This document shows positions 7,544 through 61,097 of a stretch of DNA of 64,000 nt, piece by piece. Positions within the stretch are counted from its first letter, which is position 1; every line of letters begins with the position of its first letter. Where the stretch lies: positions 186,001 to 250,000 of the IMG/VR virus record IMGVR_UViG_3300020202_000061, one strand, 5' to 3'. Made by a program: the position numbers and the translations under genes. The notes beneath the pieces are model-generated. The model saw only the letters and a program-made list of their open reading frames with translations. It searched no databases and had not been told where the DNA came from.

Positions 7544-7572
7544 TTGACTTTCAAGATAAGTCAATCTAAATA
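7544..7572 (+). promoter_or_regulatory. composite promoter
   Basis: TTGACT-N17-TAAATA before tRNA-Ser. Confidence 0.7.
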
Positions 7573-14260: not shown

Positions 14261-14574
14261 TGGATCAGGATTTCTCCATCCTATCCGGGGCAGAGCGCGA
14301 AACCATCTGGTGCCTGTTCAAGCACGGACCCACTCATGACGGGAATGTCCCGAGCAAATCCACTCGTGATGACCTAGTCTCCAAAGGGTTGGTTCAACGT
14401 GGTCACGGTTACGCATGGTTGACCCTGGCCGGAGTGAAGTCAGCGGTCCTGCTTGGGATGGATTCGAAAAAGGATCGATACCTCAGGGAACTCCATTATC
14501 CCACGATTGACTACGTGGCCCCAAATGAGGTTCGACAGCAGAAATTCCTTGACTTGGACACCACCCAGGGCTAA
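14260..14574 (+). CDS. hypothetical protein, possibly winged-helix
   Basis: GTG overlaps upstream stop; DLVSKGLV..G...LTLAG pattern. Confidence 0.55.
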   Translation: MDQDFSILSGAERETIWCLFKHGPTHDGNVPSKSTRDDLVSKGLVQRGHGYAWLTLAGVKSAVLLGMDSKKDRYLRELHYPTIDYVAPNEVRQQKFLDLDTTQG

Positions 14575-14583
14575 ATACAATCT

Positions 14584-14660
14584 GTTCTCGTAGGCTAACA
14601 GGATAAACCGCTGGTTTCCTAAACCGGATTTGTCGGGTTCGAATCCCACCGAGAACGCCA
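14584..14660 (+). tRNA. tRNA-Arg(CCT)
   Basis: GTTCTCG/CGAGAAC-G-CCA; TT-CCT-AA. Confidence 0.9.
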
Positions 14661-14679
14661 AAAGTTCCTCAAGGTTTCC

Positions 14680-15429
14680 ATGCAAGGCATTTACAAGATC
14701 AACGGTCTGGTCCATTGGACCGAGCGTGAAATTCGTCTGCGTGAGAGATTCATCACGGAGTTCGAATACGATGTCCGTGCATTCCTGCTCGGGACGAATC
14801 CTGCCTGGAACATTTCCCGTGTAGAAGGTCCCCTATTGACCCCGTTGGGGTTGATTTCCGCCGCGTACACTCCGAGTGACGTGTTCGTGCAGGAAACCTT
14901 CGAGAATGAAACACCGCTGGTTCTGCGCCCGGAAACCACTCCTGCGACCTACGCCTGGATGTGCCATCTGATCGAGCAGCAGGAGGCTCGCTTTCCGATG
15001 TGCGTATGGCAGGCCGGTAAATCGTTTCGTCGTGAACAGGATCAGGTCTCCAAGAACATGCGCCTGAAAGAATTCTATCAGATGGAATTCCAGTGCGCGT
15101 TCACGGCCGATTCCGCCAATGACTACCACGGCGCGAGTCTTGAACCGGTTCGTCGCATGCTGGAGAGTGCAATCTGCTTACCCACTCGTCTGGTTGAATC
15201 CGACCGACTTCCCGCATATTCCCAGATCACCATGGATGTCGAAGTTGACAACGGTGACAAATGGATGGAGGTCTGCTCGATTTCTCGCCGTACGGATTTT
15301 CCTATGAAGGCACGATTTGCCAACAAAAAGGGAGAGGTCGTCGAAAAGGAACTGTTGATCTTGGAGATCGCCATTGGTTTGGATCGCTGTGTTTACAATA
15401 GGTTAATTCGTGAATCCAGAATCCAGTGA
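14680..15429 (+). CDS. stand-alone class II aaRS catalytic core (GlyRS/ProRS/ThrRS-like)
   Basis: LRPET, GKSFRRE (motif 2), EFYQMEFQ, IGLDR (motif 3); no anticodon-binding domain. Confidence 0.8.
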   Translation: MQGIYKINGLVHWTEREIRLRERFITEFEYDVRAFLLGTNPAWNISRVEGPLLTPLGLISAAYTPSDVFVQETFENETPLVLRPETTPATYAWMCHLIEQQEARFPMCVWQAGKSFRREQDQVSKNMRLKEFYQMEFQCAFTADSANDYHGASLEPVRRMLESAICLPTRLVESDRLPAYSQITMDVEVDNGDKWMEVCSISRRTDFPMKARFANKKGEVVEKELLILEIAIGLDRCVYNRLIRESRIQ

Positions 15430-15475
15430 AAAACCTCTTGACATTCCTGCGAGAATCGCTAAATACCAGCGTGAT

Positions 15476-15550
15476 GCGGATGTAGCTCAGTGGTAGAGCG
15501 AGACGTTGCCAACGTCTAGGTCGAGGGTTCGATCCCCTTTATCCGCTCCA
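15476..15550 (+). tRNA. tRNA-Gly(GCC)
   Basis: cloverleaf, U73, CCA. Confidence 0.93.
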
Positions 15551-15565
15551 AATTTCTCCTCCCCT

Positions 15566-15640
15566 GCGGGTATGGTCTAGGGGTTGGGCCTCAGCCTTCC
15601 AAGCTGAAGAGGACCGGTTCGATTCCGGCTACCCGCTCCA
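15566..15640 (+). tRNA. tRNA-Gly(TCC)
   Basis: cloverleaf, U73, CCA. Confidence 0.92.
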
Positions 15641-15672
15641 GATGTCAACGGTCCCCGATACGTCGGGTCCAG

Positions 15673-15700
15673 CCCCAGTCTCCGGACTGGGGTTTTTCTT
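15673..15700 (+). terminator. intrinsic terminator
   Basis: CCCCAGTC-TCCG-GACTGGGG-TTTTT. Confidence 0.75.
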
Positions 15701-16459: not shown

Positions 16460-16789
16460 ATGGCGAAGATAGATTGGGCTGCGATCCACGCCTTGAACAT
16501 CGAGCACGCGGATAATCCTGTGACCGGGGATTACTGGCATGAGATGTTCTGTCCGATTGCCCGCATCCACAAAGTCACGGCAACTCATGTCCTTGTGGAG
16601 AAACTCACCAAGCCAGTTGTCGAACAGTCGCGCTTTAACATGACGAGATCGGAGTTTGCCCGTTGGATTCGTTACGATTCCATCCCGAATAAGACCTGGG
16701 CCGATGTAAGTCCAGCAGAGCCTGGACAAACTACAGGATTTTCGCTATTCTCGTGGTATGATAATCTACGCAGACGGTTCCTGGGATAA
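16460..16789 (+). CDS. hypothetical protein
   Basis: GGAG before ATG. Confidence 0.5.
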   Translation: MAKIDWAAIHALNIEHADNPVTGDYWHEMFCPIARIHKVTATHVLVEKLTKPVVEQSRFNMTRSEFARWIRYDSIPNKTWADVSPAEPGQTTGFSLFSWYDNLRRRFLG

Positions 16790-17300
16790 TCTGAAACGTG
16801 GCGGCTACGGCTGGGTGATCTTCGCCGGGGGCCAACGCCATTATCGTGGCGCGTCGGTGTTCCCGGCCGAGTCCTCCTCCCTGATGGAATTTACCGCCTG
16901 CATCAGCGCGCTCGAATTCGCCTGGAAATACCTGCTCGGTCGGGGCCAGGGCAACGCCGCACGTGCCAATGAGAAAATCATCATGGTGACAGACGTGGTG
17001 GATTTCCCGCGCACCCTGCCGTTGATCCCGATGATCCGGGACCGTGGGTGGCTCAACGAGAAGGGCGCACCCTTGTTGAATCGCGAACACTGGGAGCGGC
17101 TCCACGAGGTTCACGAACACATTCAACCCCATTGGGAATGGGTATCGGGCAAGCACAATCCGGCGGGAAAGATCGCCCATAAGCTGGACAACTATTACCG
17201 GCTGAAATGTGAGATTTCCCCGGCTCTGCTCGACAACAAAACCCGCAAGCGATTCCGGCGGTATGAGAAGCAGACCGCGTTAATCCTTGACAAACTCTGA
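16758..17300 (+). CDS. RNase H-like protein
   Basis: IYADGS..GGYGWV, MEFTA, WEWVSGKH. Confidence 0.75.
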   Translation: MIIYADGSWDNLKRGGYGWVIFAGGQRHYRGASVFPAESSSLMEFTACISALEFAWKYLLGRGQGNAARANEKIIMVTDVVDFPRTLPLIPMIRDRGWLNEKGAPLLNREHWERLHEVHEHIQPHWEWVSGKHNPAGKIAHKLDNYYRLKCEISPALLDNKTRKRFRRYEKQTALILDKL

Positions 17301-20344: not shown

Positions 20345-20410
20345 GTCTGAGGGATTTCTTTACGGAAACCTCTTGACAAGAACAAGGGGTTTCCGTAAAT
20401 ACCCTTTGTC

Positions 20411-24722: not shown

Positions 24723-25044
24723 TTGCGTGGGCCGGAAAAAAGAGATTCCGGCCCAAATTTTTTGGAACCGAATCCCAGGTTCAGGAGTTTACGGATTCAT
24801 AACGAACCACAATGGAGTGTAAAAAGATTCTTAATCTACATTTTCCCTATTGACGGAATCTAAACGACTCGCTACGATAGGGAACGACTATGGTGTAAAC
24901 TTTCAAAGTGGAGCCGAATTCCCCCCGGCTCCCAACACGAGCCAGGACTCTTCCCCCCAAGGGTCCTGGCTCTTCTTTTCTGGTAAAAGAAAAACTCTTG
25001 ACATTCTCGGGATTCTCGCATAAATACTCCCTGCGACACGGTTT

Positions 25045-32698: not shown

Positions 32699-32776
32699 GG
32701 CGGTGTACTGCTTAGCGGCCTAAAGCGGGTGTCTCTAAAATACTGATCGCGGGTTCGAATCCCGCCACCGCCGCCA
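32699..32776 (+). tRNA. amber suppressor tRNA (CTA anticodon)
   Basis: GGCGGTG/CACCGCC-G-CCA; GGTGT-CT-CTA-AA-ATACT; own promoter at 32662. Confidence 0.82.
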
Positions 32777-51751: not shown

Positions 51752-51942
51752 GCATGGACGCAACCCCTACCGGCCGTTGGGAAATCACCCCGTGGTGGCT
51801 CCGCCTGATCGGGAAGCCCAGCTTTCGTATGTTCTATGAGGGTTGGGGCAGTGATTTCATGGGTAGTGTGCCGGACTATTGGGAATACTCTTGGGAGCCT
51901 TGGAAGGAAGAGTTTCTTCACGACAACACAAAAACCCCTTGA
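51748..51942 (+). CDS. Trp-rich hypothetical protein
   Basis: ATGA coupling. Confidence 0.5.
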   Translation: MSMDATPTGRWEITPWWLRLIGKPSFRMFYEGWGSDFMGSVPDYWEYSWEPWKEEFLHDNTKTP

Positions 51943-51977
51943 CATCCCCATGGGGTTCCCCTAAATAGGTCTTGGAT

Positions 51978-61028: not shown

Positions 61029-61097
61029 TTCACTACCTCGTAAAAACCTCTTGACTTCCCTAGGATGCCCCGCTAAATACCCGTTACCAACTTCGTT

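What the first reader, a model, noticed from the sequence alone, without database searches (positions are those of the whole stretch)
14584..15640. Minimal class II synthetase core flanked by tRNA-Arg and two tRNA-Gly
Seen: a 249-aa protein with motifs 2 and 3 and LRPET but no anticodon-binding domain, followed directly by tRNA-Gly(GCC) and tRNA-Gly(TCC). Knowledge: these motifs resemble alpha2-type GlyRS/ProRS/ThrRS cores, and truncated class II paralogs often ligate amino acids to proteins or carriers. Inference: either a minimal GlyRS for the adjacent tRNAs or an amino-acid ligase with another acceptor.
Basis: partly seen in the sequence, partly recalled or inferred. Interest (0 to 1): 0.6.

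Follow-up and report, generated by a model that had tools for sequence, protein, structure and literature searches.

The report
Free-standing mini glycyl-tRNA-synthetase core in phage
A jumbo phage carries a 249-residue stand-alone copy of the catalytic core of glycyl-tRNA synthetase with its glycine and ATP sites intact but no tRNA-reading domains; it belongs to a large, untested, mostly phage-borne family, and its position beside two glycine tRNAs is not conserved in relatives.

Summary
ORF 14680-15429 (+) encodes a 249-aa class II synthetase core, flanked by tRNA-Arg(CCT) and by tRNA-Gly(GCC) and tRNA-Gly(TCC). The core is of alpha2-GlyRS type by sequence and by fold. It keeps the three glycine-binding glutamates, their bracing arginine and the ATP-binding residues of motifs 2 and 3, and a controlled prediction supports the class II homodimer. 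It lacks the anticodon-binding domain and the GlyRS insertion domains, and no such domain is encoded elsewhere in the phage. It belongs to an uncharacterised family (over 1,300 clusters at 90% identity, nearly all 210-260 aa). The family is deeply diversified in jumbo phages, and one shallow clade sits as a lone gene in Rhizobium, Phenylobacterium and related chromosomes; all are under purifying selection. Linkage to tRNA-Gly is not conserved: it is absent from all 80 bacterial loci and from the CcrBL9 and Domovoi phages, and it is not above expectation once local tRNA composition is allowed for. The gene does tend to sit in or beside phage tRNA arrays, and here it follows a tRNA-type promoter. 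It most likely forms glycyl-adenylate. The acceptor is unresolved: non-tRNA about 0.45, tRNA 3' end about 0.3.

The parts
14549..14577 (+). Promoter-like element TTGACT-N17-TAAATA, ending 7 nt before tRNA-Arg. It is the likely start of the unit that contains the ORF.
   Evidence: The motif TTGACW-N16-18-TAAATA occurs 7 times in the window, all on the + strand, against 0.02 expected. Six copies end 7-20 nt before a tRNA gene. Sequence read.
14584..14660 (+). tRNA-Arg(CCT), 19 nt upstream of the ORF start
   Evidence: ARAGORN; Rfam RF00005 at 44.5 bits
14680..15429 (+). ORF of 249 aa: a free-standing alpha2-GlyRS-type class II catalytic core (P0001). An SD-like AAGG lies at 14671-14674.
   Evidence: AF2 model with pLDDT 89.8 and pTM 0.87. 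Fold matches to GlyRS at Z 20.4 and 19.4 and Foldseek E 6.6e-14.
14809..14844 (+). Motif 1 region (residues 44-55, with E49 and P51 invariant): the core of the predicted homodimer interface
   Evidence: Invariant columns in A1. Interface residues 46-55 in the dimer prediction, score 0.85 against best control 0.00.
14923..14940 (+). LRPETT strand (residues 82-87). E85 corresponds to human GlyRS E245, the first glycine-binding glutamate.
   Evidence: Alignment offset of 160 to human GlyRS. Invariant in A1, A2 and A3. Residue roles from PMC4938167.
15016..15093 (+). Motif 2 (residues 113-138: GKSFRREQDQVSKNMRLKEFYQMEFQ). It holds R117, E119, R128 and F132 (ATP site) and E136, which corresponds to human E296, the second glycine-binding glutamate.
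   Evidence: invariant columns; roles
15268..15300 (+). EVCSISRRTDF segment (residues 197-207). R204 corresponds to human GlyRS R410, which braces the glutamates. E197 and D206 are invariant.
   Evidence: Aligned to the GlyRS segment E..GIA.RTDFDL; role of R410
15358..15390 (+). Motif 3 (residues 227-237: LILEIAIGLDR). E229 corresponds to human E522, the third glycine-binding glutamate. A231 sits at the Ser/Ala position 524. R236 is the motif 3 arginine.
   Evidence: Aligned to IEPSLGADR of a canonical GlyRS and to LELSFGVDR of N. equitans GlyRS
15438..15465 (+). Second promoter-like element, TTGACA-N16-TAAATA, between the ORF stop codon and tRNA-Gly(GCC)
   Evidence: sequence read
15476..15550 (+). 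tRNA-Gly(GCC) with the bacterial glycine identity set (G1:C72, C2:G71, G3:C70, U73) and an encoded CCA
   Evidence: 68.3 bits
15566..15640 (+). tRNA-Gly(TCC) with the same identity set and an encoded CCA
   Evidence: 49.7 bits
15671..15704 (+). Intrinsic-terminator-like hairpin (10 pairs, 6 of them G-C) followed by a T-run. It is the first terminator-like site downstream of the ORF.

Best explanation
The ORF encodes a free-standing homodimeric enzyme descended from the catalytic core of alpha2-type glycyl-tRNA synthetase. It binds ATP and glycine and forms glycyl-adenylate. This step is inferred from complete conservation of the ATP site and of the three-glutamate-plus-arginine glycine pocket. 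It has no domain that could read an anticodon and none of the GlyRS insertions that hold the acceptor stem. I therefore think it most likely passes the glycyl group to a non-tRNA acceptor, as the other known domain-stripped class II paralogues do (EpmA to a protein, AsnA to ammonia, aa:carrier-protein ligases to a phosphopantetheine thiol). No partner gene is conserved next to it in phages or bacteria, so the acceptor should be something every host cell already contains: a housekeeping protein, a small-molecule amine or thiol, or a nucleotide. The gene belongs to an uncharacterised family that is chiefly borne by jumbo phages, and one lineage has become fixed in alphaproteobacterial chromosomes. 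Its position next to tRNA-Gly in this phage comes from lying inside a 115-kb tRNA-dense region, not from a conserved pairing. Shown here: the anatomy, fold, residue conservation, predicted dimer, family distribution, purifying selection and lack of conserved linkage. Inferred: glycine activation. Guessed: the acceptor.
For: Core type: Pfam PF00587 lies above its cut-off, and dimeric GlyRS is by far the best NCBIfam match. PDB sequence matches to GlyRS reach 6e-8 with the single sequence and 2e-12 with the family profile. The confident AF2 model matches GlyRS best by Foldseek and by VIA-align, Z 20.4 over 232 residues.
Active site: the alignment to a canonical GlyRS is collinear from LRPET through motif 3. 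R83, P84, E85, T86, G113, S115, F116, R117, E119, R128, F132, Q134, E136, D186, E188, E197, R204, D206, E229, G233, D235 and R236 are invariant across family members down to 31% identity. E85, E136, E229 and R204 correspond to human E245, E296, E522 and R410, the glycine-binding set. Position 524 is Ser or Ala in true GlyRS, so A231 is compatible with glycine specificity.
Oligomer: the homodimer passes the controlled test, 0.85 against a best control of 0.00, and the interface runs through motif 1.
Functional gene: dN/dS is 0.08-0.25 in phage and bacterial clades. The gene's GC and GC3 equal the phage average.
Stable architecture: the family has more than 1,300 clusters at 90% identity, nearly all 246-259 aa among the 120 listed. 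Of 300 representatives at 50% identity, the top 150 show no fusion to an anticodon-binding domain.
No helper in trans: there is no PF03129 or GlyS match in this phage, XbC2, CcrBL9 or Domovoi.
No conserved neighbour: none across phage, Rhizobium, Caulobacterales, Devosia, Labrys and Shinella contexts.
Not tied to tRNA-Gly.
Against: No biochemical data exist for any member. In phages the gene lies closer to tRNA genes than random positions in the same loci, and here it follows a tRNA-type promoter. That fits a tRNA-related role better than an unrelated ligase. Glycine specificity is read from an alignment, not from a bound ligand. The family-specific motif 2 loop (EQDQxxK) and A231 could alter the substrate. 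A non-tRNA acceptor is argued mainly from precedent and from missing domains. No candidate acceptor was identified.
Confidence: 0.45

Rival explanations
1. It is a true minimal GlyRS. The dimeric core alone binds the acceptor end of tRNA-Gly (phage and/or host) through the motif 2 loop. It recognises only U73 and the first base pairs, charges the tRNA with glycine without reading the anticodon, and so supplements or bypasses the host alpha2beta2 GlyRS during infection.
For: The glycine and ATP sites are intact. The gene is embedded in tRNA arrays more often than random positions; for example, tRNA-Gly lies within 500 bp in 9 of 73 independent viral loci against 0.93 expected under a sliding null. 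tRNA-Gly abuts the gene in at least four separate lineages. The gene follows a tRNA-type promoter with tRNA-Arg, and the first terminator comes after the tRNA-Gly pair. All five complete carrier phages examined encode tRNA-Gly. All phage tRNA-Gly genes carry a uniform acceptor identity set that a core could read. From my own knowledge: PylRS variants of about 275 aa charge tRNA without an anticodon-binding domain.
Against: Canonical alpha2 GlyRS needs C35 and C36 as well as acceptor elements, and the domains that make those contacts are absent here. Conditional on local tRNA composition, tRNA-Gly is not significantly favoured as nearest tRNA, 4 against 2.65; Glu, Ala, Ser, Val and Cys tRNAs are also enriched. 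In CcrBL9 and Domovoi the gene lies 16 and 66 kb from any tRNA. Bacterial copies have no tRNA-Gly within 8 kb in 80 of 80 loci. Those copies are maintained under purifying selection in cells that I expect, from general knowledge, to have the normal glyQS enzyme; I did not test this. Phages that need real synthetases carry full-length ones; Phosso has a CysRS and a 665-aa class II enzyme with an anticodon-binding domain. The family pI is about 5.5.
Confidence: 0.3
2. It is a dedicated synthetase for the phage amber-suppressor-type tRNA(CTA). An anticodon-blind core loads that tRNA, by analogy with pylS-pylT.
For: In Phosso and in seven further distinct viral loci, a tRNA(CTA) is the only tRNA within 1.5 kb, always upstream on the same strand, 53 to 1036 bp away. 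This phage and XbC2 also carry a tRNA(CTA), 17 and 22 kb from the gene. The family profile weakly matches PylRS cores at E 1e-5.
Against: The adjacent cases collapse to one cluster at 70% identity, so they amount to one or two evolutionary events. CcrBL9, Domovoi and all bacterial carriers lack a suppressor tRNA nearby or altogether. The tRNA(CTA) genes share no acceptor features with tRNA-Gly and vary among themselves apart from G73. This phage shows no TAG recoding: TAG ends 61 of 371 long ORFs and the standard code covers 88% of the genome. The amino-acid pocket is of GlyRS type, not PylRS type.
Confidence: 0.03
3. It activates a different small substrate, such as alanine, beta-alanine, a D-amino acid or an amine-bearing metabolite, because the Ser-to-Ala change and the altered motif 2 loop have retuned the pocket.
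For: A231 replaces the serine that helps exclude alanine in many GlyRS enzymes. The motif 2 loop is family-specific. From my own knowledge: SerRS-like aa:carrier-protein ligases shifted specificity to Gly or Ala.
Against: Ala occurs at this position in bona fide GlyRS enzymes. All three glutamates and the bracing arginine are invariant.
Confidence: 0.12
4. It is a non-catalytic or nucleotide-only protein: a regulatory subunit in the manner of HisZ or POLG2, or an Ap4A-type dinucleotide synthase that uses the ATP site without transferring glycine.
For: HisZ, the POLG2 accessory subunit and the HisRS-like domain of GCN2 are close structural neighbours, Z 13-19. NUDIX hydrolase genes recur within a few kb in Sinorhizobium, Devosia and Domovoi loci. 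From my own knowledge: human GlyRS makes Ap4A.
Against: Invariance of the glycine-binding residues as well as the ATP residues across deep divergence argues for amino-acid chemistry. No regulatory partner is conserved nearby. NUDIX genes are common, and their recurrence was not tested statistically.
Confidence: 0.08

Closest known systems
alpha2-type (dimeric) glycyl-tRNA synthetase (GlyRS of archaea, eukaryotes, Actinobacteria, Thermus, Staphylococcus)
   Same: Same class IIa core fold. Collinear alignment from LRPET to motif 3. Same ATP residues, the same three glycine-binding glutamates and bracing arginine. Predicted motif-1 homodimer.
   Different: Only 249 aa against 440-690 aa. It lacks the C-terminal HGTP anticodon-binding domain and the insertion between motif 1 and LRPET. 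It scores 64.8 bits against an equivalog cut-off of 312. The motif 2 loop sequence is family-specific. tRNA charging is untested.
Amino acid:[carrier protein] ligases (SerRS-like, e.g. Bll0957, PDB 3mey)
   Same: Free-standing class II core without a tRNA-binding domain. They occur in Alphaproteobacteria and activate glycine or alanine. Close structural neighbour at Z 18.5.
   Different: Those descend from methanogen-type SerRS, whereas this family is GlyRS-like by sequence. From my own knowledge those ligases sit beside their carrier-protein genes; no carrier-protein gene or any other neighbour is conserved here.
EpmA / PoxA / GenX (LysRS-like lysine-EF-P ligase)
   Same: A domain-stripped class II core that makes an aminoacyl-adenylate and transfers it to a housekeeping protein. 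Its gene need not be next to its target (my own knowledge). Structural neighbour at Z 12.7.
   Different: It is a class IIb, LysRS-derived core. The Pfam PF00152 match here is only E 0.065 and below its cut-off. The amino-acid pocket differs.
GlyQ, the alpha subunit of bacterial alpha2beta2 GlyRS
   Same: A small (about 300 aa) class II core that activates glycine and has no tRNA-binding domain of its own.
   Different: It is evolutionarily unrelated in its pocket chemistry, using five different residues. It needs the GlyS beta subunit, which is absent from these phages.
Glu-Q-RS (YadB)
   Same: The same concept: a synthetase core that has lost its anticodon-binding domain yet still acts in the tRNA world.
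   Different: It is a class I, GluRS-derived enzyme that modifies queuosine in tRNA-Asp. There is no sequence or fold relation.

Membership tests
Class II aaRS core, Pfam PF00587 (tRNA-synt_2b; G, H, P, S, T) | Match to the family HMM above the gathering cut-off | tested here: met
   45.5 bits against a cut-off of 29.3, residues 75-238. Confirmed in the genome search at 46.1 bits.
Class II aaRS core | Motifs 1, 2 and 3 with the invariant motif 1 Pro, the motif 2 Arg/Glu and the motif 3 Arg, on an antiparallel beta-sheet fold | tested here: met
   P51, R117, E119 and R236 are invariant. The AF2 model aligns over residues 2-249 to many class IIa cores at Z 15-20.
Class II aaRS core | Homodimer through motif 1 | tested here: met
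   Prediction only. ipSAE 0.85 against a best control of 0.00. The mark was reached by 20 of 30 solved homodimers and 1 of 23 proteins solved as single chains. The runs agree in at least 93% of contacts and partner pLDDT is at least 89. The interface includes residues 46-55. The pass may reflect likeness to solved class II dimers.
alpha2-type GlyRS (canonical glycine--tRNA ligase) | Three conserved glutamates plus a bracing arginine forming the glycine pocket (human E245, E296, E522, R410) | tested here: met
   E85, E136, E229 and R204 align to these positions and are invariant in the family. Roles from PMC4938167.
alpha2-type GlyRS (canonical glycine--tRNA ligase) | C-terminal HGTP anticodon-binding domain (PF03129) that reads C35/C36 | tested here: not met
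   No Pfam match. The ORF ends about 13 residues after motif 3. There is no PF03129 match anywhere in the phage. The need for C35/C36 is stated.
alpha2-type GlyRS (canonical glycine--tRNA ligase) | Score above the NCBIfam equivalog cut-offs (PRK04173, TIGR00389) | tested here: not met
   64.8 bits against 312, and 34.6 bits against 243.3
alpha2-type GlyRS (canonical glycine--tRNA ligase) | Insertion domain between motif 1 and the LRPET strand that contacts the acceptor arm | tested here: not met
   It is absent from P0001 in the alignment to a canonical 463-aa GlyRS. A few ~335-aa family members carry an unrelated ~75-aa insert at that site with no Pfam match.
alpha2-type GlyRS (canonical glycine--tRNA ligase) | Glycylation of tRNA-Gly | not testable with these tools
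   Needs an aminoacylation assay
Amino acid:[carrier protein] ligase | SerRS-type core, and a carrier-protein gene in the same locus | tested here: not met
   The best sequence relatives are GlyRS, not SerRS. No neighbour family is shared across contexts. PF00550 itself was not searched.
HisZ (ATP-PRT regulatory subunit) | HisRS-like sequence above the TIGR00443 cut-off | tested here: not met
   13 bits against a cut-off of 271.65. No his genes were seen in the four bacterial neighbourhoods inspected; hisG was not specifically searched.
EpmA/PoxA/GenX | Class IIb (PF00152) LysRS-like core | tested here: not met
   PF00152 scores E 0.065, 12.7 bits against a cut-off of 25
PylRS | Class IIc core with a large hydrophobic pocket, paired with tRNA(CUA) in a genome that reads TAG as sense | tested here: not met
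   Only weak profile matches at E 1e-5. The pocket is of GlyRS type. TAG behaves as a stop codon here. The tRNA(CTA) linkage is confined to one clade.

The most novel reading that the evidence does not exclude
The family is the smallest natural aminoacyl-tRNA synthetase known. On this reading a 210-260-residue, anticodon-blind dimeric GlyRS core charges tRNAs by acceptor-stem features alone. Jumbo phages would spread it to keep glycine tRNAs charged independently of the host's unrelated alpha2beta2 enzyme, and Alphaproteobacteria would have domesticated it once.
Probability: 0.27. Interest if true: 0.8.

Novelty: new variant of a known kind. Interest (0 to 1): 0.55.

Why it matters
Truncated synthetase paralogues have repeatedly turned out to do unexpected chemistry: EF-P lysylation, asparagine synthesis, carrier-protein loading and tRNA hypermodification. 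The review I read lists no GlyRS-core-derived paralogue (PMC9437257), and six literature searches found no work on this family. Databases call it only "aminoacyl--tRNA ligase-related protein", "glycyl-tRNA synthetase" or, wrongly, "serine-tRNA synthetase". The family is large, conserved and under selection. It occurs both in culturable jumbo phages (CcrBL9 and Bertelyviruses on Caulobacter CB15, Brevundimonas phages, Sinorhizobium phage Phosso, Xanthomonas phage XbC2) and in genetically tractable Rhizobium, so its function can be tested directly. If it charges tRNA, it would set a new lower size limit for a synthetase and provide an anticodon-independent glycine-charging enzyme. If it does not, it marks an unknown glycine-ligation reaction that both phages and rhizobia keep.

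Tried and rejected
1. The tRNA-Gly linkage as a conserved trait is rejected.
2. A shared glycine-type acceptor stem linking tRNA(CTA) to tRNA-Gly is rejected. The tRNA(CTA) genes have G73 and variable stems.
3. TAG recoding in this phage: no sign of it.
4. An anticodon-binding domain or GlyS beta subunit supplied in trans: none in G000, XbC2, CcrBL9 or Domovoi. Phosso's only PF03129 match lies inside a 665-aa full-length enzyme.
5. A conserved protein-coding partner: none across groups. My ORF caller is crude in high-GC bacterial DNA, so weak or short partners could have been missed.
6. A riboswitch or T-box leader upstream of bacterial copies: none at Rfam gathering thresholds in 8 diverse loci.
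7. PHROGs and PADLOC gave no match for the protein.
8. Near-identical phage DNA in GenBank phages: none.
9. The Staphylococcus 'phage' hit H21 is a full-length canonical GlyRS in an UNVERIFIED_ORG record, not a family member.
10. Recent horizontal acquisition by this phage is rejected, because the gene's GC and GC3 equal the phage mean.
11. The generic sigma-70 scanner did not call the tRNA promoters, because TAAATA matches TATAAT at only 3 of 6 positions. The explicit motif search did find them.
12. The careful phylogeny did not finish in the time allowed, so only the quick IQ-TREE tree is reported. One bacterial row (L023) was dropped for an in-frame stop in my extraction.
13. I could not examine the model's coordinates, so pocket volume and electrostatics were not computed.
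14. The read-mapping tools were not used.
Full report
OBSERVATION. The window is part (186001-250000) of a 347.5-kb virus record with 54.5% GC. ORF 14680-15429 on the + strand encodes 249 residues. ARAGORN places tRNA-Arg(CCT) at 14584-14660, tRNA-Gly(GCC) at 15476-15550 and tRNA-Gly(TCC) at 15566-15640. Infernal confirms all three. The protein matches the class II core family PF00587 above its gathering score, 45.5 bits against 29.3. It contains LRPET, motif 2 and motif 3, and it stops about 13 residues after motif 3. The description is therefore correct. The flanking needs context, however. The phage has 55 tRNA genes interspersed with protein genes across about 115 kb, 30 of them in this window, so a gene flanked by tRNAs is ordinary here.

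WHAT KIND OF CORE. Among NCBIfam models, dimeric (alpha2) GlyRS is the best match by far at E 6.8e-18. HisRS follows at 3.5e-6 and ProRS at 5e-4. The GlyRS score is far below the equivalog cut-off, and only the core region of the model is matched. The best PDB sequence matches are mycobacterial, N. equitans, human and T. thermophilus GlyRS. An AlphaFold2 model built on 30 family members is confident, with pLDDT 89.8 and pTM 0.87. Its best Foldseek matches are GlyRS structures at E 6.6e-14. An independent all-against-representatives search ranks N. equitans GlyRS first (Z 20.4, 232 residues aligned) and human GlyRS second (Z 19.4). These sit just above a dense field of class IIa cores at Z 17-19, which includes HisRS/HisZ, SerRS, ProRS, ThrRS, the POLG2 accessory subunit and the aa:carrier-protein ligase Bll0957.

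ACTIVE SITE. A canonical 463-aa alpha2 GlyRS turned up by accident in an unverified 'phage' record. It aligns collinearly with the family from LRPET through motif 3. The following residues are invariant in that GlyRS and in family members down to 31% identity: R83, P84, E85, T86, P106, Q111, G113, S115, F116, R117, E119, R128, F132, Q134, E136, Y180, D186, E188, E197, R204, D206, E229, G233, D235 and R236. According to Valencia-Sanchez et al. 2016 (PMC4938167), alpha2-type GlyRS holds the glycine amino group with three absolutely conserved glutamates (human E245, E296, E522). [quoted passage not shown] The alignment offset to human GlyRS is 160. With it, these residues map to E85, E136, E229, R204 and A231. 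The glycine pocket and the class II ATP site (R117 and E119 of motif 2, F132, R236 of motif 3) are thus intact. The inference that the protein forms glycyl-adenylate rests on this conservation and was not measured.

OLIGOMER. A controlled complex prediction supports a homodimer. The score is 0.85 against a best control of 0.00. That mark was reached by 20 of 30 solved homodimers and by 1 of 23 proteins solved as single chains. The three runs agree in at least 93% of contacts, and partner pLDDT is at least 89. The interface runs through residues 2-18, the motif 1 strand 46-55, residues 66-96, and 114-116. Class II dimers are well represented among solved structures, so this shows likeness to them rather than proof of binding.

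WHAT IS MISSING. There is no HGTP anticodon-binding domain in the protein or anywhere else in the phage. There is no GlyS-type beta subunit either. The same holds for XbC2, CcrBL9 and Domovoi. Phosso's single PF03129 match lies inside a full-length 665-aa enzyme. The large GlyRS insertion between motif 1 and LRPET is absent. Both GlyRS types normally read C35 and C36, N73 and the first three acceptor pairs (PMC10164559). This core could at most read the acceptor end.

THE FAMILY. The word-indexed search found 1,316 clusters at 90% identity. Nearly all of the 120 listed are 246-259 aa, and the sources name them 'aminoacyl--tRNA ligase-related protein' or 'glycyl-tRNA synthetase'. The exhaustive search of 1.84 billion representatives found 300 clusters at 50% identity with E up to 1e-3, and 160 with E up to 1e-10. 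Almost all are 210-260 aa, and none of the top 150 is fused to an anticodon-binding domain. A handful of ~335-aa members carry a ~75-aa insert exactly where GlyRS has its first insertion; the insert has no Pfam match. In GenBank phages the gene occurs in jumbo phages of Sinorhizobium (Phosso, annotated 'serine-tRNA synthetase'), Xanthomonas (XbC2), Caulobacter (CcrBL9, CcrSC and the Bertelyviruses) and Brevundimonas, and in two ~635-kb uncultured phages. IMG/VR gave 111 confirmed loci at 31-63% identity, many on contigs of 200-560 kb. Among 185,579 species genomes, 112 have it; the 80 loci kept are all Alphaproteobacteria, mainly Rhizobium and Phenylobacterium with Caulobacter, Devosia, Labrys and Shinella, at 60-69% identity. 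A quick maximum-likelihood tree places all 19 sampled bacterial copies in one shallow clade (support 86) inside a much deeper viral radiation. The window's protein and L093 are their nearest viral kin (support 98). The root is only a midpoint, so I do not claim a direction of transfer. The far greater viral depth nonetheless marks this as primarily a phage family. dN/dS is 0.09 in Rhizobium, 0.25 in Caulobacterales and 0.08 in a phage clade. The gene's GC and GC3 match its own genome in every case checked. These are maintained, long-resident genes.

LINKAGE TO tRNA GENES. In 80 bacterial loci there is no tRNA-Gly within 8 kb, and almost no tRNA of any kind. In 73 viral loci that are independent at 90% protein identity, 25 have a tRNA within 500 bp and 9 have a tRNA-Gly within 500 bp. 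I slid the gene along each locus as a null model. By that test the gene is closer than expected to tRNAs of many types: Gly 9 against 0.93, suppressor 6 against 0.95, Glu 5 against 0.75, and also Cys, Val and Ala. This null ignores gene boundaries and probably understates the expectation. Conditioning on each locus's own tRNA composition gives tRNA-Gly as the nearest tRNA 4 times against 2.65 expected, which is not significant. Among complete genomes, CcrBL9 has the gene 16 kb from any tRNA and 88 kb from its tRNA-Gly. Domovoi has it 66 kb from any tRNA. XbC2 has it next to tRNA-Ser and 40 kb from tRNA-Gly. Phosso's tRNA-Gly lies 248 kb away. The specific pairing with tRNA-Gly is therefore not a family trait. 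A looser tendency to sit in or beside phage tRNA arrays is real.

AN UNEXPECTED NEIGHBOUR. In Phosso and in seven further distinct viral loci, the only tRNA within 1.5 kb is an amber-suppressor-type tRNA(CTA). It always lies upstream on the same strand. I tested the idea of an anticodon-blind enzyme that serves this tRNA, and four results count against it. The tRNA(CTA) genes have G73 and variable acceptor stems, not the uniform G1:C72/C2:G71/G3:C70/U73 set of the phage tRNA-Gly genes. The cases collapse to one cluster at 70% identity. CcrBL9 and Domovoi have no suppressor tRNA. This phage uses TAG as a stop codon: 61 of 371 long ORFs end in TAG, and the standard code covers 88% of the genome. 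I keep this reading as a low-probability rival.

LOCAL TRANSCRIPTION ANATOMY. The motif TTGACW-N16-18-TAAATA occurs seven times in the window against 0.02 expected, always on the + strand. Six copies end 7-20 nt before a tRNA gene. One copy (14549-14577) precedes tRNA-Arg(CCT), and the ORF starts 19 nt after that tRNA. A second copy (15438-15465) lies between the ORF's stop codon and tRNA-Gly(GCC). The first terminator-like hairpin (15671-15694 plus a T-run) follows tRNA-Gly(TCC). The ORF therefore appears to be transcribed from a tRNA-type promoter as a tRNA-mRNA co-transcript. The two tRNA-Gly genes have a promoter of their own. These are sequence inferences without transcript data.

NEIGHBOURS. 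All-against-all clustering of ORFs from 167 loci found no protein family shared between the viral, Rhizobium, Caulobacterales, Devosia, Labrys and Shinella contexts. No widely conserved adjacent gene exists among phages outside one clade. A CysRS-sized family lies within a few genes in 14 viral loci, as in Phosso, but it is absent from this phage. In bacteria the gene stands alone in ordinary chromosomal neighbourhoods, without a known leader RNA. PHROGs and PADLOC have no model for it.

INTERPRETATION. The shown features are an intact glycine-and-ATP site, a dimeric class II core, a stable domain-free architecture across deep divergence, and purifying selection. They point to an enzyme that makes glycyl-adenylate. 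The acceptor is not shown. Several points argue against a conventional tRNA role. Every tRNA-holding element of GlyRS outside the core is missing. Phages that need synthetases carry full-length ones. Carriers keep the gene under selection in cells that I expect, from general knowledge, to have the normal glyQS enzyme; I did not test this. To my knowledge every characterised class II core stripped of its tRNA-binding domains uses a non-tRNA acceptor or none. In favour of a tRNA role are the array context, the tRNA-type promoter and the uniform acceptor identity of phage tRNA-Gly. I put a non-tRNA glycine ligase at about 0.45, a true anticodon-blind mini-GlyRS at about 0.3, another small substrate at about 0.12, a non-catalytic or nucleotide-only role at about 0.08, and a suppressor-tRNA synthetase at about 0.03.

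NOVELTY. Literature searches found only generic mentions (XbC2 paper) and no study of the family. A 2022 review of synthetase paralogues lists no GlyRS-core-derived paralogue. I rate this a new variant of a known kind, the truncated class II synthetase paralogues. It is widespread, conserved and directly testable in culturable phages and in Rhizobium.

Noticed in passing
window 7544-7572, 14549-14577, 15438-15465, 20373-20401, 24998-25026, 51939-51967, 61051-61079 (all + strand): A conserved promoter-like motif, TTGACW-N16-18-TAAATA, occurs 7 times against 0.02 expected. Six copies end 7-20 nt before a tRNA gene or cluster (Ser, Arg, Gly, Thr, Ala, Asp). The seventh lies about 250 nt before tRNA-Gln. 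It looks like a dedicated promoter class for the phage's tRNA genes.
   Followed up: partly
window 32699-32776 (+): An amber-suppressor-type tRNA(CTA) with G73 and an encoded CCA, in a phage that otherwise uses TAG as a stop codon (61 of 371 long ORFs). Similar tRNA(CTA) genes sit directly upstream of the mini-GlyRS homologue in Phosso and seven other viral contigs. Their amino-acid identity was not determined.
   Followed up: partly
G000 whole record; tRNAs between about 178 and 293 kb (window = 186001-250000): The phage encodes 55 tRNA genes covering nearly all amino acids. They are scattered singly and in small clusters among protein genes over about 115 kb rather than forming one array. 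Two of the ARAGORN calls have abnormal anticodon loops ('???').
   Followed up: no
window 16758-17300 (+): A 180-aa ORF with an RNase H domain (PF00075, E 2.4e-9) lies 1.3 kb downstream of the mini-GlyRS.
   Followed up: no
L008 10502-11948 (- strand), Sinorhizobium sp. B11 chromosome: About 2 kb from the bacterial homologue, a TyrRS-like gene is called as two overlapping ORFs: 334 aa with the class I catalytic domain PF00579, and 149 aa with the TyrRS C-terminal and S4 domains. This may be a split gene, a frameshift or a sequencing error.
   Followed up: no
P0121, P0122, P0127, P0128, P0152 (family members of 306-352 aa): These members carry a ~75-aa insert with no Pfam match between motif 1 and LRPET, exactly where canonical GlyRS has its acceptor-contacting insertion 1.
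   Followed up: partly
ESM Atlas clusters: Other GlyRS-like clusters without an anticodon-binding domain appear to exist outside this family: a 323-aa 'glycine--tRNA ligase family protein' cluster in Chloroflexota (some members with GlyRS_ins_1) and a 252-aa cluster in Actinomycetota. Loss of the anticodon-binding domain may have happened more than once.
   Followed up: no
L001 4001-4753 (Sinorhizobium phage Phosso, XYS97415.1) and L227 1021-2412 (OR844995.1): Two database issues. The Phosso homologue is annotated 'serine-tRNA synthetase', but the family is GlyRS-like. The record 'Staphylococcus phage SA 1306 Kay' (UNVERIFIED_ORG) contains a full-length canonical 463-aa GlyRS, which may be host DNA in the assembly.
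   Followed up: partly
L001 1-3000 and 8264-8596 (Phosso); viral fam 20 in 14 loci: In the Phosso-like clade the homologue sits in a translation and RNA-repair neighbourhood: RNA ligase, an ATP-grasp protein, a full-length CysRS, tRNA(CTA) and a peptidyl-tRNA hydrolase. This phage has no CysRS.
   Followed up: partly
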